Shown piece by piece: positions 4,235 through 57,355 of a DNA stretch of 64,000 nucleotides. Both the position numbers and the translations under genes were made by a program. The stretch spans positions 102,819,942-102,883,941 of the forward strand of contig NC_090380.1 in assembly GCF_036365525.1 (NCBI RefSeq), in the 5' to 3' direction. Position 1 is the first letter of the stretch. Every line of letters begins with the position of its first letter. This DNA comes from Heterodontus francisci (Eukaryota). The notes below the pieces were generated by a model. That model saw only the letters and a program-made list of their open reading frames with translations, was not told where the DNA came from and did no database searches.

Positions 4235-4523
4235 AGCTCTGTAGCTGACGGTCGCAGTCTCCTCTGCTCTCTGTCTTCTTGAGATAACCAAGGGGTTACG
4301 CCGGAGCCAGCTTGGATCCACCCCAGAAAGTTCTCCTTTATCCTATTGTCTTCTTGAGCTAACCGAGGTTATAGGCCAAAGCCAGCATGGATCTACGTTG
4401 GAAAGCTCTTTTCTGTCTACAGTGGTTTTTTTCCCTCCCGACAGCCTGTTTATATGCCTTATTGCTAGGGCGCTGGTGGGTGTCTCATGCCAATCACCTA
4501 TTCAATTATCCATTTAGTAAGGG

Positions 4524-7500
4524 GAGGTGGTGGCGTAGTGGTATTGTCATTGAACTAGTAACCCAGAGACCCAGGGTATTGCTCTGGGGTCATGGGTTCG
4601 AATCCCACCACGGCAGAAGGTGGAATTTGAATTCAATTAGTAAAAAAAAAAAAGTCTGGAATTAAAAACTAATCTAATGATGGCATGAAACCATTGTCGA
4701 TTGTTGTAAAAACCCATCTGGTTCATTAATGTCCTTTAGGGAAGGAAATCTGCTGTCCTTGTCTACATGCGGCTCCAGACTCACAGCAAGTTTGACTCTT
4801 ACATGCCCTCTGAAAGGGCCTATCATGCCACTCCGTTGTATATAATGGCTATGAAGTCAATAAGGAATGAAACCCGGATGGACCACCCGGCATCGACCTA
4901 GGCACCGGAAACCACAATGGCAAACCCAGCCCAGTCAACCCTGCAAAGTCCTCCTTACTAACATCTGGGGGCTTGTGCCAAAGTTGGGAGAGCTGTCCCA
5001 CAGACTAGTCAACCAGCAGCCTGACATAGTCATACTCACGGAATCATACCTCCTAGACACTGCCATCATCCCCGGTTCTGTCCCGTCCCATTGGCAGGAC
5101 AGAGCCAATGAGGTGGTGTCACAGTGGTATACAGTCAAGAGGGAGTTACCCTGAGTCCTCAACATTGACTCCGGACCACATGGAGTCTCATGGCATCAGG
5201 CCAAACATGGGCAAGGAAACCTCCTGCTGATTACCACCTACTGCCCGGGCCCCCACCTCAGCAGACGAATCAGTATGCCTCCATGTTGAACAGCACTTGG
5301 AGGAAGCATTGAGGGTGGTAAGGGCACAGAATGTACTCTGGGTGGGGGACTTCAACTTTCATCACCAAGAGTGACTTGGTAGCACCACTCTTGACCGAGT
5401 CCGAAAGAACATAGCTGCTAGACTGGGTCTGTGGCATGTGGTGAGGGAACCAACAAGAGGGAAAAATATACTTGACCATGCATCTGCCCATAACCGTATT
5501 GGTAGGAGTGACCACCGCACAGTCCTTGTGGAGACAAAGTCCCATCTTCACATTGAGGATACCCTCCATCGTGTTGTGCGACAATACCACCGTGCTAAAT
5601 AGGATAAATTTTGAACAGCTCTAGGAATGCAAAACTGAGCATCCATGAGGTGCTGTGGGCCATCAGCAGCAGCAGAATTGTATTCAACCACAATCCGTAA
5701 CCTGATGGCCCAGCATATCCCTCACTCTACCATTACCATCAAGCCGGGTGACCAACCTTGGTTCAATGAAGAGTGAAGGAGGGCATGTCAAAATGAGGTG
5801 CAAACCTGTGAAGCTACAACCCAGGGCTACATGCATGCCAAACAGCAGAAGCAGCTTGCGACAGACAGAGCTAAGTGAGCCCATAACCAATGGATCAGAT
5901 CTAAGCTCTGCAGTTCTGCCATATCCAGTCGTGAATGGCGGTAGACAATTAACTGGAGGAGGTGGCTCCACAAATATCCCCATCCTCAATGATGAGGGAG
6001 CCCAGCACATCAGTGCAAAAGATAAGGCTGAAGCATTTGCAACAATCTTCAGCCAGAAGTGCCGAGTTGATGATCCATCTCGGCCTCCTCCTGAAGTCCT
6101 CAGCATCACAGATGCCAGTCTTCAGCCAATTCGATTCATTCCACGTGATATCAAGAAACGACTGAAGGCACTGGATACTGCAAAGGCTATGGGCCCTGAC
6201 AACATTCCAGCAATAGTACTGCAGACCTGTGCTCCAGAACTTGCCGCGCCCCTAGCCAAGCTGTTCCAGTACAGCTACAACACTGGCATCTACCCAGCAA
6301 TGTGAAAAATTGCCCAGGTATCTCCTGTACATGAAAAGCAGGACAAATCCGACCCAGCCAATTAGTGTCCCATCAGTCTACTCTCAATCATCAGCAAAGT
6401 GATGGAAGATGTTGTCAACAGTGCTATCAAGCAACTCTTGCTTAGCAATAACCTGCTACCTGACGCTCAGTTTGGGCTCTGCCAGGACCACTGAGCTCCA
6501 GACCTCATTGCAGCCTTGGTTCAAACATGGACAAAAGAGCTGAACTCCAGAGGTGAGGTGAGAGTGACTGCCTTTGTCATCAAGACAGCATTTGACCGAG
6601 TATGGCATCAAGGAGTCCGAGTAAAACTGGAGTCGATGGGAATCGGGGGGAAAATTCTCCCCTGGTTGGAGTCATACCTAGGAAGATGGTTGTGGTTGTT
6701 GCAGGTCAATCATCTGAGCTCCAGGACATCACTGCAGTAGTTCCTCAGGGCAGTGTCCAATCCTTTCCTGCTGCTTCATCAATGACCTTCCTTCAATCAT
6801 AAGATCAGAAGTGGAGATGTTTGCTGATAGCACAATGTTCAGCACCGTTCGCAACTCCTCAGATACTGAAGCAGTCCGTGTAGAAATGCAACAAGACCCG
6901 GACAATATCCGGGCTGATAAGTGGCAAGTAACATTCGTGCCACACAAGTGCCAGGCAATGACCATCTCCAACAAGAGAGAATCTAACCATCTCCCATTGA
7001 CATTCAATGACATTACCATTGCTGAACCCCCCACTATCAACATCCTAGGGGTTACCATTGACCAGAAACTGAACTGGAGTAGCCATATAAATACCGTGGC
7101 TACAAGAGCAGGTCAGAGGCTAGGAATCCTGGCTCCCCAAAGCCTGTCCACTATCTACAAGACACAAGTCAGGAGTGTGATGGAATACTCTCCACTTGCC
7201 TGGATGGGTGCAGCTGCAACAACATTTAAGAAGCTCGACACCATCCAGGACAAATCAGCTTGCTTGATTGTCACTTCATCCACAAATATTCACTCCCTCC
7301 ACCACCGACGCACAGTGGCAGCAATGTGTACCATCTACAAGATGCACTGCAGCAACAACCAAGGCTCCTTAGACAGCAACTTCCAAACCCACGACCTCTA
7401 CCACCTAGAAGGACACGGGCAGCAGATACATGGGAACACCACCACCTGCAAGTTGCCCTCCAAGCCACACATGATCCTGACGTGGAAATATATCGCCGTT

Positions 7501-8751
7501 CTGTGGGATTGGAATTCCTTCCCCACCCCCTCAACTGGACTTTAAATCTGGACTTTATGAAATATGGGGAAAAACCCCAACCCCCACTGACACTACTACT
7601 GTGGATAAAAGCCAAATCTCAACACAAAACAGAGAGGCAGGCTGCAATCCAAGGGGTCAATTTCAAACATTTCAACATCACAACAGAACTGATACTGTTA
7701 AAGGACTGGAATTTGGGATATTATCATAACAGTGACACAGGATAACTGCCATCATGTAACCCAATTATGTAATTGGGGCGGCCATTGTTACAACTAACCG
7801 GCTCCAGACCATAGCAATCACTCCTGTCAAGGCAGGAGAGAAACCTTTTTATGTATATCAGCTCTGGAGCCTGGAATACCTCACCTTGGTGGAATTCATT
7901 ATTCTCGGTTATAGAAATAACATCAGCACTGAGTGGATCTGTCTGGACGAGGCAGGTAACAAATGAAAGAGATTAAAATGTGCTAAGCGCTGACCATCCA
8001 GCAGGATGGCTTCAGGAGCTGCGTTTATGATATTTCGATAAGGATCATCATAAAAAGAACAAGATCGAAGGGTTTGGCAGTGCAGTCAAGAAGAAGGGTC
8101 AGGAAAGGTTAGCCTGGCTCATGGACCTGCAGATCCTCAACGGAAGGGCCAACCGCGTGGAGGATTGTAAGTTATCAGCCACGTCCAAGGGGTATTTGGG
8201 GCTGAGAGTTTAAAGCAATTTTAAGTGTAACAACTAAATTCTGGGAGGGTTTGGGTTTTGAATTGAGTGAGTTTGGGACAGAAACGTGGGGCTTTGCCTG
8301 TGGCTTTTTGAAAAAGGTTTATCTTAAGTCGTGGTGACTTGTGTGTTTGGGTGGGAGCCGAGGTTAAATCGTGGAGGGATTTAAATCGGAATAACCAATC
8401 AAGGTGTCATGTGATGTCCTTTAAATTAGTTTAGAGGTCTTTGTATCAGGGTGTTAGGAGGGTTTTTATAAACAAGTTTGTGGTTCAGCCCAACCCTGTG
8501 TTTGTGCAATTTGTCCTTTATAAAATCATAAAAGACAAGAACCATCAGCAAGGGGAGAAATGGGTTCCTTCACTGTCACTGGGTCAAAATCCTGGAAATA
8601 CCTTCCTAACAGCACTGTGGGTGTACCTATCCCACAAGGACTGTAGCGGTTCAAAAAGGCAGCTCACCACCACCTTCTCAAGGGCAATTAGGGATGGGCA
8701 ATAAATGCTGGCCTAGCCAGTGACACCCACATCCCAGGAACAAATTTAAAA
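4524..8751 (+). mobile_element. Apparently full-length CR1-group LINE with tRNA-like 5' head and a single decayed EN-RT ORF (no ORF1)
   Basis: A box TGGCGTAGTGG 4531-41, B box GGTTCGAATCC 4595-4605. APE N-terminus VLLTNIWGL..PDIVILTESYL from ~4945, then GDFN, RT motifs AFDRVWH, PQGSV, MFAD, and C-term QVRSVMEY. 3' tail gggcaattagggatgggcaataaatgctggcc. AAGGG repeated at 4519-23 and 8752-56. Confidence 0.85.
7502..8563. mobile_element. Unclassified ~1.06-kb LTR-like insertion in the LINE 3' end
   Basis: The LINE resumes exactly after it; GTTC duplicated at 7498-7501 and 8564-8567; begins TGTGGG but lacks a terminal CA; no coding similarity. Confidence 0.55.
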
Positions 8752-9077
8752 AAGGGACAGATATCCAAGGTAGATCCCTCCTATTTCTGTCTGAAGCCCA
8801 TGAAGCCATCTCGTGGCTTACATCCCGTTAACCTTTACTCAAGACAGTTGGTTTAGATATGGGTCATGAGTTCCCACCTTATCAGGCTGAGGAATGTCTT
8901 GCACATAGCCAGTTCTAGAGTCATGTCCTTGGCAGAGATAACAGGCCTACGCTGTTCTGTGCCTGTCAGCCCAGCAAGCTGCTATAGAATCTTAATAATA
9001 GAGAGCTATTTCTCTAATATTCAATTAATTTCTTAAGCTATTATAAGGTTATTAGATAGCCATTTCTTACAATACCA

Positions 9078-9424
9078 CCACCTCTGCACCAGAAGAGATC
9101 CCAATGATTCAAGTAGCTGAAGGCCTCCCGCCAACACCAGCTCTTTAGCCACTCATTCATTTGCCTTATCCTCCTATTCTTACCCACACTAGCACGTGGC
9201 ACAGGGAGTAAGCCTGAGGTTACAACCCTGGAGGTCCTGCTTTTTATCTTTCTGCCTAACTCCCTATATTTACTTTGCAGGACCTCATCTCTCTTCCTGC
9301 CTATGCCGTTAGTGCTAATATGGACCACGACCTCTGGCTGCTCACCCTCCCCTTTCAGAATGTCCTGCAGCCGCTCCGAAACATCGTTGACCCTAGCACC
9401 AGGGAGGCAACATACCATCCTGGG
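9078..9424 (-). mobile_element. CR1 ORF1 (SGNH esterase) fragment
   Basis: MVCCLPGARV..VVVHISTNGIG..VVTSGLLPVP..HWDLFW. Confidence 0.9.
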
Positions 9425-10993: not shown

Positions 10994-11398
10994 GGTGACA
11001 GTGGTGTTGTAGTAATGTCACTGAACTAGTAATCCAGAGACCTAGCCAATGCCCTGCAGACATGGGTTCAAATTCCACCATGGCAGCTGGTGGAATTTAA
11101 ATTCAATTAATGAATTAAAAAAATTTGGAATTGAAAGCTCCTCTCACTAATAGCGTCATGAAACTGTCATCAGTTGTTGTAAAAATGCATCTGGTTCACT
11201 AATGTCCTTTAGGGAAGGAAATCTGCTGTCCTTACCTGGTCTGGCCTACATGTGACTCCAGACCCATAGCAATGTGGTTGACTCTTAACTGCCCTCTGAA
11301 ATGTCCGAGCAAGCCACTCAGTTTTCAAGGGCAATTAGGGATGGGCAACAAATGTTGGCTTTGCCAGCGACGCCCACATCCCATGAAAGAATAAAAGA
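10994..11398 (+). mobile_element. SINE made of the head and body of the 4524 LINE joined to its last ~75 nt
   Basis: Colinear with 4524-4835 (ctggttcactaatgtcctttagggaaggaaatctgctgtcctt), then caagggcaattagggatgggcaa as at 8678-8750. Confidence 0.85.
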
Positions 11399-14700: not shown

Positions 14701-17700
14701 GAACGACATAGGTAAAAAAAAGGATGAGGTCCTAAAAGCAGAATATAGGGAGCTAGGAAGTAAGTTGAAAAGTAGGACCTCCAAGGTAGTGATCTCAGGA
14801 TTACTACAAGTGCCATGTGCTAGTCCGAGTAGAAATAGCAGGATATATCGGATGAATACATGGCTGAAGAGATGGTGTGAGGGGGAGGGTTTTAGATTCC
14901 TGCGCATTGGGACCGGTTCTGGGGGAGGTGGGACCAGTACAAACTGGATGGGTTACACCTGGGCAGTACCGGGACTGATGTCATAGGGGGAATATTTGCT
15001 AGAGTGGTTGGGGAGGGTTTAAACTAAAATGGCAGGGGGATGGGAACCTTTGCGAGGAGTCAGAGGAGGGGGGAATCAAAGACAAGAACAAAAGACAGGA
15101 AGGGGAAGAAGAAAAGTGATAGGCAGAGAAATCAAGGGCCAGAATTAAACAGGGCCACAGTGAAAAATATTGGGAAGAGGACAAGTAATTTTAAAAAGCC
15201 AAGCCTGAAGGCTTTGTGCCTTAACGCGCGGAGCATTCACAGTAAAGTGGATGAATTAATCACGCAAATAGATGTAAACGGGTATGATATAGTTGGGATT
15301 ACAGAGACATGGCTGCAAGGTGACCAGGGATGGGAAATGAAGATCCAGGGATATTCAGTATTTAGGAAGGACAGACAAAAAGCAAAAGGTGGTGGAGTTG
15401 CATTGCTGGTTAAAGAGGAAATTACCGCAATAGTGAGGAAAGATATTAGCTCTGACAATGTGGAATCTGTATGGGTAAATAGAGAAACACTAAGGGGCAA
15501 AAAACGTTAGTGAGGATTGTATATAGACCCCTAAACTGTAGTGCTGATGTTGGGAATGGCATTAAACAGGAAATTAGAGATGCATGCGATAAAGGAACAT
15601 CTGTAATTATGGGTGACTTTCATCTGCATAAAGATTGGGCAAATCAAATTAGTTACAATACCATAGAGGAGGAATTCTTGGAGTGTGTACGGGATGGTTT
15701 TCTGGACCAATACGTTGAGGAACCAACTAGAGAACAGGCCATCCTGGACTGGGCATTGTGTAATGACAGAGGAATAATTGACAATCTAGTGGTGTGAGAC
15801 CCCTTGGGGATGAGCAACCATAATATGATAGAATTCTTCATCAAGATGGAGAATGACGTAGTTGATTCTAAGACAAGTGTCCTGAATGGAATGGAAACTA
15901 CGAAGGTATGAGGCACAAGTTGGCCATGACGGATTGGGAAACATTACTTAAAGGGATGATGGTGGATAGGCAAAGGCAAACATTTAAAGAGCGCACGGAT
16001 GAACTGCAACAATTGCTTATCCCTGTCTGGCGCAAAAGTAAAACGGGAAAGGTAGTCAAACCATCGCTTACAAGGGAAATTAGAGACAGCATTAGATCCA
16101 AGGAAGAGGCATATAAATTTGCCAGGAAAAAACAACAGACCTGAGGATTGGGAGCAGTTTAGAATTCAGCAAAGGAGGACCAAGGGATTGATTAAGAAGC
16201 AGAAAATTGAGTCACAGAGCAAGCTTGCGGGGAACATAAAAATTGACTGTTAAAGTTTCTATAGGTATGTGAAGAGAAAAAGATGGGTGAAGACAAATGT
16301 AGGTCCCTTACAGTCAGAAACAGGGGAATTTATTATGGGGAATAAAGAAATGGCTGACCAATTAAATGCATACTTTGGTTCTGTCTTCACAAAGGAGGAC
16401 AGAAATATCATACCAGAAATGTTGGGGAACGCAGGGCTTAGTGAGCGAGAGGAACTGAAAGAAATCAGTATTAGTAAAGAAATGGTGTTGGGGAAATTGA
16501 TGGGATTGAAGGCCGATAAATCCCCAGGGCCTGATGGTATGCATCCCAGAGTACTTAAGGAAGTGGCCCGAGAAATAGTGGATGCATTGGTGGTCATCTT
16601 CCAAGATTCTATAGACTCTGGAACAGTTCCTACCGATTGGAGGGTAGCTAATGTAACCCCACTATTTAAAAAGGGAGGTAGAGAGAAAACAGGGAATTAT
16701 AGACCAGTCAGTCTGACGTCAGTAGTGGGGAAAATTCTAGAGTCCATCATCAAAGATTTTATGGCAGACCACTTAGAGAACAATGGTAGAATCGGGCAGA
16801 GTCAGCATGGATTTACAAAAGGAAAATCATGCTTGACAAATCTACTAGAATTCTTGGAGGATGTAACTAGTAGAGTTGATGAGGGAAAGCCAGTGGATGC
16901 GGTTTATTTGGACTTTCAGAAGGCTTTCGACAAAGTCCAAGATAAGAGATTAGAGTGTAAAATTAAAGCGCATGGGATTGGGGGTGGTGTATTGCGATGG
17001 ATAGAAAATTGGTTGGCAGACAGGAAACAAAGAGTAGGAATAAATGGGTCTTTTTCCGAATGGCAGGCAGTCACTAGTGGGGTACCGCAGGGATCATTGC
17101 TGGGATCTCAGCTATTCACAATATATATTAATGATTTAGATGAGGGAACTAAATGTAACATCTCCAAATTTGCAGATGACACAAAACTGGGTGGGAGGGT
17201 GAGTTGTGAGGAGGATGCAGAGAGGCTTCAGGGTGATTTGGACAAGTTGAATGAGTGGGCTAATGCATGGCAGATGCAGTATAATGTGGATAAATGTGAG
17301 GTTATCTACTTTGGTAGCAAAAACAGATTATCATCTGAATGGCTATAAACTGAGAGAGGGGAATATGCAACGAGGCCTGGGTGTTCTCATACACCTGTCG
17401 CTGAAGGTAAGCATGCAGTTGCAACAGGCGGTGAAAAGGGCAAATAGTATGTTGGCCTTCATAGCGAGAAGATTCGAGTACAGGAGCAGGGATGTCTTGT
17501 TGCAATTATACAGGGCCTTGGTGAAACCACACCTGGAATATTGTGTGCAGTTTTGATCTCCTTTTCTGAGGAAGGATGTTCTAGCTATAGAGAGAGTGCA
17601 GCGAAGGTTTACCAGACTGATTCCTGGGATGGCGGGACTGACGTATGAGGAGAGATTGAGTCGGTTAGGATTATATTCGCTGGAGTTCAGAAGAATGGGG

Positions 17701-18100
17701 GGGGAATCTCATAGAAACCTATAAAATTCTAAAAGGACTTGACAGGGTAGATGCAGGAAGGATGTTCCCGATGGTGGGGGAGTCCAGAACCAGGAGTCAT
17801 GGTCTAAGGATACAGGGTAAACCTTTCAGGACTGAGATGAGGAGAAATTTCTTCACCCAGAGAGTGGTGAGCCTGTGGAATTCGCTATCACAGATTCAGT
17901 TGAGGCCAAAACATTGTATGTTTTCAAGAAGGAGTTAGATATAGCTCTTGGGTCTAAAGGGATCAAAGGGTATGGGGCGAAAGCCAGAACAGGTTACTGA
18001 GTTGGATGATCAGCCATGATCATAATGAATGGCGGAGCAGGCTTGAAGGGTTGAATGGTCTACTCCTGCTCCTATTTTCTATGTTTCTATGTTTCCATGT
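14701..18100 (+). mobile_element. CR1 LINE (end of ORF1 plus disrupted ORF2); arm A of an inverted pair
   Basis: SKVVISGLL; CLNARSI..GITETWL (APE); RPVSLTS, QHGF, PQGS, FADDTK; tail ctattttctatgtttctatgttt. Confidence 0.95.
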
Positions 18101-19930: not shown

Positions 19931-20520
19931 TAATGCCATAAAGTTAATGCTATAAAAATTTATTTTGCTGAGCTCAAAGTCTTAATCAATTCATTGCTGC
20001 AGAATGTTGAAGTCACATAATAGTTACGGAAAGAACTATGGATATCATTCACATTTAATAATGCTCCAACAATTCATCTCATCATAGAGAAAATGAAGCA
20101 AAACCAGGGGCCATAAATATAAAGCTGTCACTAACAAATCCAACAGCGAATTCAGGAGAGACTTCTTTATCCGGACAGTGGTTAGAATAGGAAATTTGCT
20201 ACCACAAGGAGCAGTTAGGTGAATAGCATATTCAGGGAAGCTAGATATACACAGGAGGGAGAAGGGAATAGAAGGTTATTAATAAGATTAGATGAAACGG
20301 GGTAGGAGAAGGGTCACATGGAGCATAAACACCAGCATGGATCAGTAGGGCCCAAGTACCTGTTTCTATGCTGTAAATTCCACGTAATTCTACATTATGA
20401 AGCCAGCATATCACCATCCAGGTGAAGAACATTTTACAGGGTGGAGGTGGTAGGGGGTGGTGTTTGATGGAGAAGGGAACAGCCAGAAGCTGTGGCCCAT
20501 ACCAGAACCAATCAGTTAGG

Positions 20521-23500
20521 AAACATAGAAAATAGGAACAGGAGTAGGCCATTCAGCCCTTCGAGCCTGCTCCGTCATTCATTATGATCATGGCTGTTCA
20601 TTCAACTCAGTAGGCTGTTCTGGCTTTCGCCCCATACCCTTTGATCCCTTTAGACCCAAGAGCTATATCTAACTCCTTCTTGAAAACATACAATGTTTTG
20701 GCCTCAACTGAATCTGTGATAGCGAATTCCACAGGCTCACCACTCTCTGGGTGAAGAAATTTCTCCTCATCTCAGTCCTGAAAGGTTTACCCTGTATCCT
20801 TAGACCATGACCCCTGGTTCTGGATTCCCCCACCATCGGGAACATCATTCCTCCATCTACCCTGTCAAGTCCTGTTAGAATTTTATAGGTTTCTATGAGA
20901 TGCCCCCTCACACTTCTGAACTCCAGCAAATATAATCCTAACCGACTCAATCTCTCCTCATACGTCAGTCCCGCCATCCCAGGAATTAGTCTGGTACACC
21001 TTCGCTGCACTCCCTCTATAGCAAGAGCATCCTTCCTCAGATAAGGAGATCAAAACTGCACACAATATTCCAGGTGTGGCTTCACCAAGGCCCTGTATAA
21101 TTGCAGCAAGACATCCCTGCTTCTGTACTCGAATCCTCTTGCTATGAAGGCCAACATACCATTTGCCCTTTTCACCGCCTGTTGCAACTGCATGCTTACC
21201 TTCAGCGACAGGTGTACGAGAACACCCAGGTCTCGTTGCATATTCCCCTCTCTCAGTTTATAGCCGTTCAGATAATAATCTGTTTTTGCAACCAAAGTGG
21301 ATAACCTCACATTTATCCATCTTATACTGTATCTGCCATGCATTAGCCCACTCACTCAACTTGTTCAAATCACCCTGAAGCCTCTCTGCTTCCTCCTCAC
21401 AACTCACCCTCCTACCCAGTTTTGTGTCATCTGCAAATTTGGAGATATTACATTTAGTTCCCTCATCTAAATCATTAATGTATATTGTGAATAGCTGAGA
21501 TCCTAGCACCGATCCCTGCGGTACCCCACTAGTCACTGCCTGTCATTCGGAAAAAGACCCATTTATTCCTACTCTTTGTTTCCTGTCCGCCAACCAATTT
21601 TCTATCCATCACAATACACCACCCCCAATCCCATGCGCTTTAATTTTACACGCTAATCTCTTGTGTGGGACTTTGTCGAAAGCCTTCTGAAAGTCCAAAT
21701 AAACCACATCCACTGGCTTCCCCTCATCAACTCTACTAGTTACATCCTCCAAGAATTCTAGTAGATTTGTCAAGCATGATTTTCCTTTTGTAAATCCATG
21801 CTGACTCTGCCCGAATCTACCACTGTCCTCCAAGTGCTCTGCTATAAAATCTTTGATAATGGACTCTAGAATTTTCACCACTACCGACGTCAGGCTGACA
21901 GATCTATAATTCCCTGTTTTCTCTCTACCTCCCTTTTTAAATAGTGGGGCTACATTAGCTACCCTCCAATCGGGAGGAACTGTTCCAGAGTCTATAGAAT
22001 CTTGGAAGATGATCACCAATGCATCCAATATTTCTAGGACCACTTCCTTAAGTACTCTGGGATGCATACCATCAGGCCCTGGGGATTTATCGGCCTTCAA
22101 TCCCATCAATTTCCCCAACACCATTTCTGTACTAATACTGATTTCTTTCAGTTCCTCTCTCTCACTAAGCCCTGCGTTCCCCAACATTTCTGGTATGATA
22201 TTTGTGTCCTCCTTTGTGAAGACAGAACCAAAATATGCATTTAGTTGGTCAGCCATTTCTTTATTCCCCATAATAAATTCCCCTGTTTCTGAATATAAGG
22301 GACCTACATTTGTCTTCACAAATCTTTTTCTCTTCACATACCTATAGAAACTTTTACAGTCAGTTTTTATGTTCCCCACAAGCTTGCTCTCGTACTCTTT
22401 TTTCCCCTTCTTAATCAATCCCTTGGTCCTCCTTTGCTGAATTCTAAACTGCTCCCAATCCTCAGGTCTGTTTTTTTCTGGCAAATTTATATGCCTCTTC
22501 CTTGGATCTATTGCTCTCTCTAATTTCCCTTATAAGCCATGGTTTGGCTACCTTTCCCATTTTACTTCTGCACCAGAAAGGGATAAACAATTGTTGCAGT
22601 TCATCCATGCGCTCTTTAAATGTTTGCCATTGCCTATCCACCATCATCCCCTTAACTAACGTTTCCCAATCCATCTTCGCCAACTCGCGCCTCATACCTT
22701 CGTAGTTTCCTTTACTAAGATTCAGGACCCTAGTCTCAGAATCAACTACGTCATTCTCCATCTTGATGAAGAATTCTATCATATTATGGTTGCTCATCCC
22801 CAAGGGGTCTCACACCACCAGATTGTCAATTATTCCTCTGTCATTACACAATACCCAGTCTCGGATGGCCTTTTCTCTAGTTAGTTTCTCAACGTTTTGG
22901 TCCAGAAAACCATCCCGTATACACTCCAAGAATTCCTCCTCTATGGTATTGTGACTAATTTGATTTGCCCAATCTATATGCCGATGAAAGTCACCCATAA
23001 TTACAGATGTTCCTTTATCGCATGCGACTCTAGTTTCCTGTTTAATGCCATTCCCAACATCACCACTACAGTTTGGGGGTCTATATACAAGTCCCACTAA
23101 CGTTTTTTGCCTCTTATTGGTTTTCAGCTCTACCCATACAGATTCCACATCGTCAGAGCTAATATCTTTCCTCACTATTGCGGTAATTTCCTCTTTAACC
23201 AGCAATGCAACTCCACCACCTTTTGCTTTTTGTCTGTCCTTCCTAAATACTGAATACCCCTGGATGTCCATCCCTGGTCACCTTGCAGCCATGTCTCTGT
23301 AATCCCGACTATATCATACCCGTTTACATCTATTTGCGCCATTAATTCATCCACTTTATTGCGAATGCTCCGCGCATTAAGGCACAACGGCTTAAGGCTT
23401 GTCTTTTTAACATTACTTGTCCCCTTCCCACTATTTTTCACTGTGGCCCTGTTTGATTCTGGCCCTTTTGCCTATCACTTTTCTTCTTCCCCTTACAGTC

Positions 23501-24331
23501 TTTTGTTCTTGTCTTTGATCTCCCCTCCTCTGACTCCTTGCAAAGGTTTCCATCCCCCTGCCATTTTAGTTTAAACCCTCCCCAACCACTCTAGCAAATA
23601 CTCCCCCTATGACATCAGTCCCAGTCCTGCCCAGGTGTAACCTGTCCAGTGTGTACTGGTCCCACCTCTCCCAGAACCGGTCCCAATGTCCCAGGAATCT
23701 AAAACCCTCCCCTTCACACCATCTCTTCAGCCACGTATTCATCCAATATATCCTGCTATTTCTACTCTGACTAGCACGTAGCACTGGTAGTAATCCTGAG
23801 ATCACTACTTTTGAGGTCTTATTTTTCAACTTACTTCCTAGCTCCCTATATTCTGCTTTTAGGACCTCATCCTTTTTTATTACCTATGTCGTTTGTACCA
23901 ATGTGTACCACGACCACTGGCGGTTCACCCTCCCCCTTCAGAATGTCCTGTAACCGCTCTGAGACATCCTTAACCCTAGCACCAGGGAGGCAACATACCA
24001 TCCTGGAGTCTCTTTTGCGGCCACAGAAACGCCTATCTATTCCCCTTACAATTGAATCCCCTATAATTATTGCATTCCCACACTGTTTACTCCTTCCCAG
24101 CGCAGCAGAGCCAACCATGGTGCAATGAATTGGGCTGTTGCTGCTTTCCCCTGAGAGGCCATTCCCCCCAACAGTATCCAAAGCAGTATATCTGTTTTGC
24201 AGCGGAATAGCCACAGGAGATTCCTTAACTGCCTGCCTAGTCCTCTTGCTCTGCCTGGTGGTCACCCATTCCCTTCCTGCCTGTGGATTCTGAGCCTGCG
24301 GTGTGACCGCCTCTCTATATGTGCTATCCAC
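20521..24331 (-). mobile_element. CR1 LINE (ORF1 esterase plus disrupted ORF2); arm B of the inverted pair
   Basis: IIIGDSIVRG..CCLPGARV..HIGTND (SGNH/GDSL blocks); APE and RT fragments nearly identical to 14701-18100. Confidence 0.95.
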
Positions 24332-33278: not shown

Positions 33279-33289
33279 TATTCGTCCTT

Positions 33290-34335
33290 GTGATGTGAGC
33301 ATCGCTGGCAAGGCCAACATTTGTTGCCCATCCCTTTTTGACCTTCAGAAGCTAGTGGTGAGCCACCTTCTTGAACTATTGTAGTCCATCTGGTATAGGT
33401 GCACCCACAGTGCTGTTAGGGAGGGAGTTCCATTCATAAGGTCAGAAGTGGGATGTTTGCTAACGTTCAGCACCATTCGTGACTCCTCAGATACTGAAGC
33501 TGTCTGTGTCCAGATGAAGCAACACCTGGACTTGGGCTGATAAGTGGCAAGTAACATTGGCACCACACAAGTGCCAGGCAATGACCATCTCAAACAAGAG
33601 CGAATCTAACCATCTCCCCTTGATGTTCAATGACATTACCATCACTGAATCCCCCACTATCAACATCCTGGGAGTTACCATTGACCAGAAACTGAACTGA
33701 ACCAGCCACATAAATACTGTGGCTAGAAGAGAAGGGCAGAAGCTAGGAATTCAGTGGTGAGCCACTAACCTCCTATCTCCCAGCGTCTATCCACCATCTA
33801 CAAGGTACAAGTCAGGAGTGTGATGGAATACTCTTCACTTGCTTGGATGGGTGCAGCTCCAACAACACTCAAGAAGCTCGATGCCATCGAGGAAAAAGCA
33901 GCCTGCTTGATTGGCACCCCATCCACCACCCTCAACATTCACTCCCTTCACCACCAATGCACAGTGACAGCAGTGTGTACCATCTACAAGATGCACTGCA
34001 GCAACTCACCTAGGCTCCTTCAACAGCACCTTCCAATCCCGCGACCTCTACAACCTAGCAGGACAAGGCAGAAGATGCTTGGGAACATCACCACCTGCAA
34101 ACTATGAACAAATAAAAAAAGAATGATCCAGCGACAGTGAAGGAACAGTGATATAGTTCCAAGTCAGGATGGTATATGGTTTGGAGGGGTACTTGCAGGT
34201 GGTGGTATACCCATGCATTTGCTGCCCTTGTTCTTCTAGGTGGTAGAGGTTGTGGGTTTGGAAGGTGCTGTTGAAGGAGGCTTGGTGAGTTGCTGCCATG
34301 CATCTTGTAGATGATACACACAGCTGCCACTGTAC
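33290..34335. mobile_element. Two fragments of the 4524-type LINE: a - copy (33290-33432 plus 34125-34335) split by a + copy (~33433-34122)
   Basis: DKWQVT..KCQAMTIS and MEYSSLAWMGAAPTTLKKLD on +; tail and 3' region on -. Confidence 0.85.
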
Positions 34336-56934: not shown

Positions 56935-57355
56935 AAGCTGGTGTAAGGTTGTTACTAGACTAATAATGATCCAGAGAATATGAGTTCAAATGCCACCATG
57001 GCAGGTTAGGGATTTGAATTCAGCTTATAAAAATATCAGAAAATAAAAAGCATGCATCAGTAAAAGTGACCACAAAGCTGGTAGATTGTTGTAACAACCC
57101 GACTAGTCATTAATGCCCTTTAGGGAAGGACATCTTCTGTCCTTACCTGGTCTGGGCCTATAGATGTCTCCAGTCTACATCAAAGTGGTTGACACTTAAT
57201 TACTATCTGAAGTGGTCTAGCATAGTCAGTCAGTTGTTTTCAGATGCTGCTAGTGGTTCAAGAAGAAGACTCACCAACACTTTCTCAAGGTAACTAGGGA
57301 TGAACAATAAATGCCAGCCTTGTCAGTGATGCCCAGACCCTGTGAAGGAATAATA
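56935..57355 (+). mobile_element. Older SINE derivative of the 4524-type LINE with a longer LINE tail
   Basis: taatgccctttagggaagga..ccttacctggtctgg, then ggttcaagaagaagactcaccaacactttctcaaggtaactagggatgaacaataaatgc. Confidence 0.75.

What the first reader, a model, noticed from the sequence alone, without database searches (positions are those of the whole stretch)
4524..8751. A LINE that looks built for RNA polymerase III: tRNA-like head, no ORF1, almost no T-runs
Seen: the element opens with a tRNA-like head (A box 4531-41, B box 4595-4605), has a ~350-nt leader, then goes straight into an APE-endonuclease/RT frame with no room for ORF1. Head and tail are bracketed by a short AAGGG duplication, and the interrupted host LTR rejoins across it, so head plus LINE appear to be one insertion. 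Scanning the ~3.2-kb sense strand (nested insert excluded), I find only one T4 (5609-12, TTTTG, possibly CpG decay of TTTCG) and no T5. A4+ runs are frequent, and neighbouring CR1s have many T4-T7 runs. Known: T4+ terminates vertebrate Pol III, and CR1-group LINEs normally use Pol II and usually carry ORF1. Inference: this is an autonomous SINE-LINE hybrid transcribed as a multi-kb Pol III mRNA, which would need cap-independent translation through the leader. I cannot check whether the family has already been described.
Basis: partly seen in the sequence, partly recalled or inferred. Interest (0 to 1): 0.85.

Follow-up and report, generated by a model that had tools for sequence, protein, structure and literature searches.

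The report
Shark LINE with SINE-type tRNA head
This is a dead copy of a very abundant shark jumping gene that encodes its own copying enzyme yet starts with the tRNA-like promoter module of short SINEs and avoids runs of T, which hints, without proving it, that RNA polymerase III can transcribe a protein-coding element.

Summary
Window 4524-8751 is one insertion: 5-bp duplication AAGGG, and the host repeat is continuous across it. It consists of a tRNA-like head with exact A and B boxes, a SINE-type body, a single APE-RT ORF without ORF1, and a 3' tail shared with the SINE. The copy is dead (stops, frameshifts, a 1.06-kb nested insert).

The fusion is not a chance juxtaposition. The plain SINE at 11001-11387 equals this element minus 4838-8674. 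Four whale-shark gene models read from the SINE body, through the same junction, into the endonuclease. Two of them start at an ATG inside the shared body.

T-run avoidance is real but modest on one copy. There is one T4 in 3.17 kb, and it coincides with a decay-made stop codon. T3+ runs number 9 against 15.6 under synonymous-codon permutation (P 0.003). A, C and G runs are normal. Neighbouring CR1s have 3.9 T4+ per kb.

Pol III transcription is untested.

The scan has already flagged this architecture on other DNA of the same genome. I found no paper describing a tRNA-headed LINE. ORF1-less L2 LINEs are already known.

The parts
4519..4523 (+). Left copy of the 5-bp target-site duplication AAGGG
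   Evidence: Sequence. The empty-site paralog at 2402-2925 has a single copy.
4524..4612 (+). tRNA-derived head with A box 4531-4541 and B box 4595-4605, a Pol III type-2 promoter layout with 53 nt between the boxes
   Evidence: tRNA detectors do not call it. Homologous to the SINE heads at 11001 and 56980.
4613..4837 (+). A-rich linker (A12 at 4642-4653) plus the conserved SINE-type body. Everything up to 4837 is shared with the plain SINE.
   Evidence: Contigs of four organisms cover it deeply.
4815..4817 (+). Position of the family's likely start codon (AGG in this copy, ATG in the SINE copy and in the whale-shark models), in frame with the endonuclease once the extra base at 4873 is allowed for
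   Evidence: P0003 begins MAEQA... and P0158 begins MAQQATQLY..., against the window translation RAYHATPLY. The 1-nt difference at 4873 is seen in 40 contigs of run X1.
4838..7501 (+). LINE-only part of the ORF: N-terminal leader, APE endonuclease (from about 4945), linker and reverse transcriptase. It is broken by at least 8 stops and at least 3 frameshifts.
   Evidence: tblastn to P0009, P0033, P0039 and P0044. Pfam domains of those proteins. Weak RVT_1 matches on window pieces.
5609..5612 (+). The only T4 on the sense strand. It is TTT followed by the T of an in-frame TGA stop that aligns to Lys/Arg in relatives, so it is probably decay after insertion.
7502..8564 (.). Nested insertion of an unrelated repeat, flanked by GTTC. 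It is not part of the element.
   Evidence: Most family contigs join 7497-7501 to 8564-8573. Its depth is high only in organism A.
8565..8691 (+). C-terminal end of the ORF, with the natural stop TAG at 8689-8691
   Evidence: Translation. It aligns to the last 40 residues or so of P0009, P0044 and P0039.
8675..8751 (+). 3' tail shared with the SINE (88% identity to 11322-11387). It contains a hairpin at about 8691-8735 and the only AATAAA, at 8700. It is the presumed recognition site for the reverse transcriptase.
8752..8756 (+). Right copy of the target-site duplication AAGGG
11001..11387 (+). Plain SINE of the same family: head, body and tail, equal to this element with 4838-8674 deleted

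Best explanation
Window 4524-8751 is a dead, full-length copy of an abundant elasmobranch LINE family with a single ORF (APE-RT) and no ORF1. The family's canonical 5' end is a SINE-type module: a tRNA-derived head with intact A and B boxes, then a conserved body.

The ORF starts inside that body and stops inside the 3' tail. The partner SINE is simply the same unit with the ORF deleted, from codon 8 to about 75 nt before the 3' end.

Most likely mechanism (inferred): TFIIIC/TFIIIB assemble on the internal A and B boxes, and RNA polymerase III starts at the first base of the element and reads all 3.2 kb. The sense strand has been kept free of T-run terminators to allow this. The encoded reverse transcriptase recognises the full-length RNA through the 3' hairpin tail, exactly as it recognises the SINE RNA, and copies it by target-primed reverse transcription. 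Because the promoter is internal, every full-length copy carries it along.

The protein could come from the same uncapped RNA at low efficiency, or from rarer Pol II read-through transcripts. A stringent, tail-recognising reverse transcriptase can act in trans, so either source would do.

Shown: the anatomy, the single insertion, the recurrence of the body-ORF junction, and the T-specific run avoidance. Inferred: Pol III transcription, the source of the protein, and that the head is present on most full-length copies.
For: Single insertion with a TSD and a continuous host repeat.

The first base of the element lies 7 nt upstream of the A box, which is where tRNA-type Pol III units and SINE copies begin.

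Both boxes still match the consensus exactly in a copy that has at least 8 stops.

The SINE at 11001-11387 equals this element minus 4838-8674.

Whale-shark models P0003, P0158, P0162 and P0001 read from the body through the junction into APE. At least 40 contigs of run X1, and 9-19 contigs in each of three other organisms, cover position 4873 between body and APE.

T-runs: one T4 against 5.5 expected from composition (P 0.026). There are 0.3 T4+ per kb here against 3.9 per kb in eight other LINE stretches of the window. Under synonymous-codon permutation T3+ is 9 against 15.6 (P 0.003) and T4+ is 1 against 3.4 (P 0.09), while A, C and G runs sit at 0.93-1.03 of expectation for 3-mers. The same-family fragment at 33530-34068 has 0 T3+. 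The lone T4 overlaps a decay-made stop.

Precedent: in human cells Pol III-made retrotransposition templates need ORF2p only, whereas Pol II-made ones also need ORF1p (PMC2666806).

Leads, not evidence: at least 10 other notes of this scan report the same 3.1-3.3-kb architecture elsewhere in this genome.
Against: There is no transcript evidence of any kind. My one reads call used assembled contigs only, which cannot show RNA starts.

I verified the head joined to the ORF in this one copy only. The whale-shark proteins prove body-to-ORF continuity, not head-to-ORF continuity.

On one decayed copy the T4 deficit is weak: first-order Markov P 0.19, second-order P 0.58. Two neighbouring canonical CR1s also show mild T4 deficits, with ratio about 0.5.

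Natural Pol III products are under about 0.7 kb, and reviews treat Pol III processivity as the limit on SINE length (PMC10886601). Uncapped Pol III RNA is a poor mRNA, and the leader shows no special structure.

ORF1-less L2 LINEs driven by Pol II are known (PMC3880073), so the lack of ORF1 needs no Pol III explanation.
Confidence: 0.5

Rival explanations
1. This is an ordinary Pol II-transcribed, ORF1-less L2/CR1-type LINE whose 5' UTR happens to derive from, or to have donated, a SINE head and body. The head is a passenger, or it acts as a Pol II promoter, enhancer or boundary element. The shortage of T-runs reflects codon context, RNA-stability or RNA-binding-protein constraints rather than Pol III termination.
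For: LINEs are generally Pol II units (PMC10886601, PMC2666806). ORF1-less L2 elements are mobile (PMC3880073). The T4 deficit is not significant under Markov nulls. Two canonical CR1s nearby also have T4+ ratios of about 0.5. The single AATAAA lies 50 nt from the 3' end, as in a Pol II polyadenylation unit.
Against: A Pol II start would have to coincide with tRNA position +1 for the head to be inherited intact. The A and B boxes remain exact in a copy riddled with stops. The T3+ depletion is T-specific and stronger than in any neighbour: ratio 0.58 against 0.82-1.09.
Confidence: 0.25
2. The master LINE has the body as its 5' UTR but no head. Head-bearing copies such as this one are recurrent by-products, made when the reverse transcriptase switches template, or RNAs recombine, within the body that the LINE RNA shares with the far more abundant SINE RNA.
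For: The body and the tail are shared by SINE and LINE, so homology-guided switching is possible. Small-RNA/LINE chimeras made in one retrotransposition event are well documented for L1 (bioRxiv 10.1101/2025.02.02.635956). The whale-shark proteins show only body-to-ORF continuity. The body bin is 3-12 times deeper than the head bin.
Against: It does not explain T-run avoidance along the ORF. Unverified notes of this scan report many head-bearing copies of 3.1-3.3 kb and no headless full-length ones.
Confidence: 0.12
3. The tRNA-like head is an RNA-processing signal. RNase P cuts host or read-through Pol II co-transcripts at the head's 5' end and so defines the element's exact 5' terminus, much as the R2 ribozyme does.
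For: The head keeps a terminal stem and a T-arm. R2 sets its 5' end by self-cleavage from a co-transcript (PMC3414825). The element begins at the tRNA-like +1 position.
Against: The cloverleaf is too degenerate for ARAGORN or the Rfam tRNA model. This reading does not predict T-run avoidance, nor conservation of the A box as such.
Confidence: 0.06
4. This is a chance juxtaposition at this locus of an independent SINE insertion and a 5'-truncated LINE insertion.
For: Both families are extremely abundant.
Against: No SINE tail lies between body and ORF. One TSD brackets the whole unit. The same junction occurs in whale-shark copies. The SINE is the exact deletion form of this element.
Confidence: 0.02

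Closest known systems
SINE/LINE pairs with a shared 3' tail (UnaSINE1/UnaL2, HE1/HER1, SacSINE1 with a CR1-4_DR-like LINE; table in PMC3747384)
   Same: A tRNA-headed SINE and a stringent-type LINE share the 3' hairpin tail that the LINE's reverse transcriptase recognises. They are very abundant in fishes and sharks.
   Different: Here the LINE also shares the SINE's head and body, its start codon and its stop codon. In the described pairs only the tail is shared. From memory, the body looks like the shark Deu-type SINE rather than the V-SINE HE1. I could not test that, because no Repbase or Dfam library was available.
SINEs built from the 5' and 3' parts of LINEs: bipartite LINE derivatives, Bov-tA/Bov-A/Bov-B, RIME/ingi (Kojima 2018, PMC5786205)
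   Same: The SINE middle corresponds to the LINE 5' part and the SINE tail to the LINE 3' part, related by internal deletion.
   Different: That survey found only RTE and Vingi clades contributing 5' parts. In that model the autonomous LINE has no small-RNA head and is a Pol II unit. Here the coding element itself carries the head.
ORF1-less single-ORF L2-clade LINEs (ZfL2-2, UnaL2; PMC3880073, PMC4176376)
   Same: Compact elements with one APE-RT ORF and stringent recognition of the 3' tail. The family's contig consensus ends in TGAATGAAT followed by an A-run, which from memory is L2-like.
   Different: No tRNA-like head or Pol III promoter is described for those elements. In the assays they are driven by Pol II promoters.
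TRIMp3 elements (Cassandra, Helenus, Ajax; PMC10886601)
   Same: Retroelements other than SINEs that carry a tRNA- or 5S-derived Pol III promoter as their own promoter.
   Different: They are LTR elements, non-coding, 0.3-1.3 kb long and non-autonomous. The element here encodes its own enzyme and is 3.2 kb long.
Small-RNA/L1 chimeric insertions (U6/L1, tRNA/L1; bioRxiv 10.1101/2025.02.02.635956)
   Same: A Pol III RNA sequence fused 5' of LINE sequence within one TSD.
   Different: Those are one-off, dead-on-arrival events with variable junctions, often with antisense tRNA halves. Here the junction is fixed, in sense, in frame with the ORF, and recurs across copies and species.

Membership tests
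APE-type non-LTR retrotransposon (LINE), CR1/L2 group | One polypeptide with an N-terminal APE endonuclease and a central reverse transcriptase | tested here: met
   Colinear tblastn to residues 17-891 of four 941-983-aa proteims that carry Exo_endo_phos and RVT_1. C-terminal match. Only weak RVT_1 matches on the broken window pieces.
APE-type non-LTR retrotransposon (LINE), CR1/L2 group | ORF1 upstream of ORF2 (typical of CR1; absent in some L2) | tested here: not met
   Only 291 nt lie upstream of the start position and they hold no ORF. Canonical CR1s in the same window have a GDSL-lipase-type ORF1.
APE-type non-LTR retrotransposon (LINE), CR1/L2 group | Clade placement by RT phylogeny against labelled reference elements | not testable with these tools
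   No Repbase or Dfam reference set was available. The nearest full-length proteins (35-46% identity) are unnamed.
tRNA-derived SINE (SINE2) | Internal Pol III promoter: A and B boxes in a tRNA-related 5' head | tested here: met
   Exact consensus boxes, 53 nt apart. 77% identity to the in-window SINE head.
tRNA-derived SINE (SINE2) | Short (about 100-700 bp) and non-coding | tested here: not met
   The element is 3165 nt without the nested insert and encodes APE-RT.
tRNA-derived SINE (SINE2) | 3' tail shared with a partner LINE | tested here: met
   8675-8740 matches 11322-11387 at 88% identity.
One-off small-RNA/LINE chimera (U6/L1 type) | A junction unique to one insertion, with the LINE part 5'-truncated at an arbitrary point | tested here: not met
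   The same junction, in frame, is present in whale-shark models P0003 and P0158. P0162 and P0001 carry the body upstream of APE. The SINE deletion breakpoint lies exactly at 4837.
Pol III transcription unit | No T4+ terminator between the start and the intended 3' end | tested here: met
   There is one T4 in 3165 nt and it overlaps a decay-made stop. The depletion is T-specific. The statistical weight on one copy is modest.
Pol III transcription unit | Transcripts made by Pol III: 5'-triphosphate ends, ML-60218 sensitivity, Pol III/TFIIIC occupancy | not testable with these tools
   Only assembled contigs were available to read laying. No ChIP or 5'-end data.
Bipartite LINE-derived SINE model (Kojima 2018) | The SINE middle and tail match the 5' and 3' parts of one LINE | tested here: met
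Bipartite LINE-derived SINE model (Kojima 2018) | The autonomous partner lacks the small-RNA head | tested here: not met
   This full-length copy carries the head inside the same TSD. I did not verify frequency across the genome.

The most novel reading that the evidence does not exclude
An autonomous, protein-coding non-LTR retrotransposon family of elasmobranchs uses a tRNA-derived internal promoter. RNA polymerase III transcribes it over 3.2 kb, and its ORF has been purged of oligo-T terminators. Its SINE partner is the deletion form of the same transcription unit. That would make it the first Pol III-driven LINE and the longest natural Pol III transcript, one that serves as a retrotransposition template and possibly as an mRNA.
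Probability: 0.45. Interest if true: 0.92.

Novelty: new variant of a known kind. Interest (0 to 1): 0.74.

Why it matters
Current accounts divide the roles cleanly. LINEs are coding, Pol II-transcribed and autonomous. SINEs are non-coding, Pol III-transcribed and parasitic, with their length capped by Pol III.

A LINE that carries the SINE promoter module, with its start and stop codons inside the parts shared with the SINE, blurs that division. It gives a concrete route by which SINEs arise: deletion of the ORF from a Pol III-competent LINE.

If Pol III does read it, three points follow:
- Pol III can make multi-kb templates in vivo.
- The experimental rule that Pol III templates need no ORF1p (PMC2666806) would explain why this family has no ORF1.
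- The huge expansion of this family in shark genomes could reflect escape from Pol II-directed silencing.

It is directly testable with ChIP, polymerase inhibitors and 5'-end chemistry.

Tried and rejected

2. The search for related loci in metagenome, genome and viral contigs found no relative. Shark DNA is not in those collections.

3. Read laying used Logan contigs only. The tables were truncated to the best-supported rows, so loose ends at the head/body/ORF junctions could not be read. The depth dip in bin 4762-4915 is explained by local deletions in this copy: position 4789 has depth 1.2k and position 4873 has 8.8k. It is not absence of that region in the family.

4. A search limited to P0003 residues 1-48 found only P0003 itself.

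5. A full-text search for a 19-mer of the SINE body gave no paper. Nishihara 2006 is not held, so the Deu-domain identity of the body stays a recollection.

6. I first suspected HE1/HER1. I rejected it from memory of the HE1 V-domain; this is not tested.

7. The Markov (order 1-3) nulls for T4 are partly circular, because they inherit the TT/TTT deficit. I replaced them with codon-permutation and neighbour controls.

8. Leader folding gave z +0.42, so there is no support for a structured IRES-like leader. This is a weak test on a decayed copy.

I built no consensus and no repaired ORF.
Full report
WHAT IS THERE

The stretch 4524-8751 opens with a tRNA-derived head. The A box TGGCGTAGTGG lies at 4531-4541 and the B box GGTTCGAATCC at 4595-4605, with 53 nt between them. 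The two boxes together, at tRNA-like spacing, occur once in the 64-kb window and never in 300 shuffles. The B box alone is no better than chance.

ARAGORN and Rfam do not recognise a tRNA and find only the T-arm. The head folds with a 7-bp terminal stem, z -2.2. It is therefore a SINE-type, degenerate tRNA derivative and not a tRNA gene.

An A-rich linker and a conserved body follow. Positions 4530-4837 are 77% identical to a plain SINE at 11001-11323. That SINE continues directly into a 66-nt tail that matches 8675-8740 at 88%. So the SINE equals this element with 4838-8674 removed.

THE CODING PART

From about 4924 to 7377 the sequence is colinear with residues 17-891 of 941-983-aa proteins that carry Exo_endo_phos and RVT_1 domains. 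After a nested 1.06-kb insert (7502-8564), which most family contigs skip, the frame resumes. It aligns to the last 40 residues or so of those proteins and stops at TAG 8689-8691.

The copy is dead. It has at least 8 in-frame stops and at least 3 frameshifts.

There is no space for an ORF1. Canonical CR1s in the same window do have a GDSL-lipase-type ORF1 directly upstream of ORF2. Lack of ORF1 is not unprecedented, though: ZfL2-2 of the L2 clade lacks ORF1p and is still mobile (PMC3880073).

ONE INSERTION

AAGGG flanks both ends (4519-4523 and 8752-8756). When the flanks are joined, they align colinearly across the junction to a paralogous repeat at 2402-2925, which has a single copy of the duplicated motif. 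The right flank matches it at 69% identity, and the left flank alone gives z 5.2 against shuffles. Support is moderate but consistent.

NOT A CHANCE FUSION

A search with the N-terminal piece found whale-shark (Rhincodon typus, EukProt) gene models.

- P0003 begins MAEQAISVVPIATKSQRNETEW.
- P0158 begins MAQQATQLYQSLQSLKEMKPGG.

These N-termini are translations of the end of the SINE body (ATGGCC.AGCAAGCCACTCAGTT, window 4815-4837). They run straight through the 4837|4838 junction into the endonuclease. The window reads RAYHATPLYIMAMKSIRNET there. P0162 and P0001 carry more upstream body sequence in front of the same endonuclease.

This copy has one extra base at 4873, compared with 40 contigs of run X1 and 9-19 contigs in each of three other organisms. 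Allowing for that base puts the ATG of the body in frame with the endonuclease.

So the ORF most likely starts inside the part shared with the SINE and, as shown above, also stops inside the shared tail. The SINE is the ORF-deleted form of the same unit.

Contigs of four coded organisms cover the LINE and the SINE at enormous depth, so the family is widespread in related species.

Other notes of this scan, including four follow-ups, report the same 3.1-3.3-kb head-plus-ORF architecture on other pieces of this genome. I treat those as leads, not as support.

T-RUNS

The 3165-nt sense strand has one T4, no T5 and 15 A4+ runs. Base composition predicts 5.5 T4+ (P 0.026). First- and second-order Markov nulls give 3.1 and 1.4 (P 0.19 and 0.58), but they inherit the TT/TTT deficit itself.

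Better controls:

1. Eight other LINE coding stretches in the window have 43 T4+ in 11.1 kb, 1.4 times the composition expectation. This family has 0.18 times.
2. I permuted synonymous codons over 2025 in-frame nt, keeping protein and codon usage. That gives T3+ 15.6 against 9 observed (P 0.003) and T4+ 3.4 against 1 observed (P 0.09). A, C and G 3-mer runs sit at 0.93-1.03 of expectation. Neighbours have T3+ ratios of 0.82-1.09.
3. The single T4 (5609-5612) is TTT followed by an in-frame TGA that aligns with Lys/Arg of relatives, so it most likely arose by decay after insertion.

The avoidance is thus T-specific, strand-specific and beyond codon usage. On one decayed copy its weight is moderate. 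Two canonical CR1s also show a mild T4 deficit.

HOW IT MOST LIKELY WORKS

The element begins 7 nt before the A box, where tRNA-type Pol III units and SINE copies begin. It keeps perfect A and B boxes despite heavy decay elsewhere, avoids the Pol III terminator along its sense strand, and ends in the hairpin tail that the SINE also uses.

The simplest reading is that Pol III, recruited by the internal promoter, makes the full-length RNA. The encoded reverse transcriptase binds the 3' tail and copies that RNA by target-primed reverse transcription, and the promoter travels with every full-length copy.

Human-cell experiments show that Pol III-made templates need ORF2p only, while Pol II-made ones also need ORF1p (PMC2666806). 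That would fit the missing ORF1.

How the protein is made is open. It could be inefficient translation of uncapped RNA. The leader shows no special fold (z +0.42). Alternatively, rare Pol II read-through transcripts could supply protein in trans. All of this paragraph is inference; no transcript data were available.

RIVALS

- A Pol II LINE with a SINE-derived 5' UTR as a passenger (0.25).
- A headless master, with heads acquired repeatedly by template switching in the shared body (0.12).
- The head as an RNase P processing signal, analogous to the R2 ribozyme (PMC3414825) (0.06).
- Chance juxtaposition (0.02), effectively excluded.

COMPARISON WITH THE LITERATURE

Shared-tail SINE/LINE pairs are classical (PMC3747384). 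SINE bodies derived from LINE 5' parts were reported only for RTE and Vingi clades, and with headless Pol II partners (PMC5786205). Pol III promoters on non-SINE retroelements are known only for short non-coding TRIMs, and that paper states that LINEs are Pol II units and that Pol III limits element length (PMC10886601). Small-RNA/L1 chimeras are one-off events (bioRxiv 10.1101/2025.02.02.635956).

Eight full-text searches found no description of a LINE with a tRNA-derived head. Repbase and Dfam could not be searched, so prior description there cannot be excluded.

VERDICT

- The hybrid architecture is a family trait, at least for the body-ORF junction.
- T-run avoidance is real but modest on this copy.
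- Pol III transcription is a reasonable but untested inference.
- The scan has found this family before on other DNA of the same genome.

Noticed in passing
window 11001-11387: A plain SINE (head, body, 66-nt tail) that equals the studied element minus 4838-8674. Its A and B boxes are decayed.
   Followed up: yes
window 7502-8564: A 1.06-kb nested repeat flanked by GTTC. Contig depth is 4-11k in organism A but only 0.1-2.5k in organisms B-D, so it looks like a lineage-enriched repeat family of unknown type.
   Followed up: partly
window 33280-34333: Same-family LINE fragments in opposite orientations. The equivalent of 6794-7451 lies on the + strand, and the equivalents of 7312-7501 and 8593-8745 on the - strand. 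This looks like an inversion or twin-priming-type rearrangement, or a nested pair.
   Followed up: no
window 14716-18087 and 20520-23878: An inverted pair of canonical CR1 copies, 89-97% complementary. Each has the end of a GDSL-lipase-type ORF1 directly upstream of ORF2. I used them as the T-run and ORF1 control. They show a mild T4 deficit (ratio about 0.5).
   Followed up: partly
window 9044-9418 (-): A 125-aa ORF fragment with a Lipase_GDSL_2 match (E 6e-8). It is a CR1 ORF1 remnant next to the right flank of the host repeat.
   Followed up: partly
window 4272-4334 and 4347-4409: A 63-bp tandem duplication (76% identity) inside the host repeat, just upstream of the insertion.
   Followed up: no
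window 8700-8705: The only AATAAA in the 3.17-kb sense strand lies 50 nt before the 3' end, inside the tail shared with the SINE. Many family contigs end in GAATAAAAAAAA. This could matter for polyadenylation of Pol III or Pol II transcripts.
   Followed up: no
window 56980-57144: A third, more diverged SINE fragment (72% identity to 4592-4760) that covers only the B-box region and the body.
   Followed up: no
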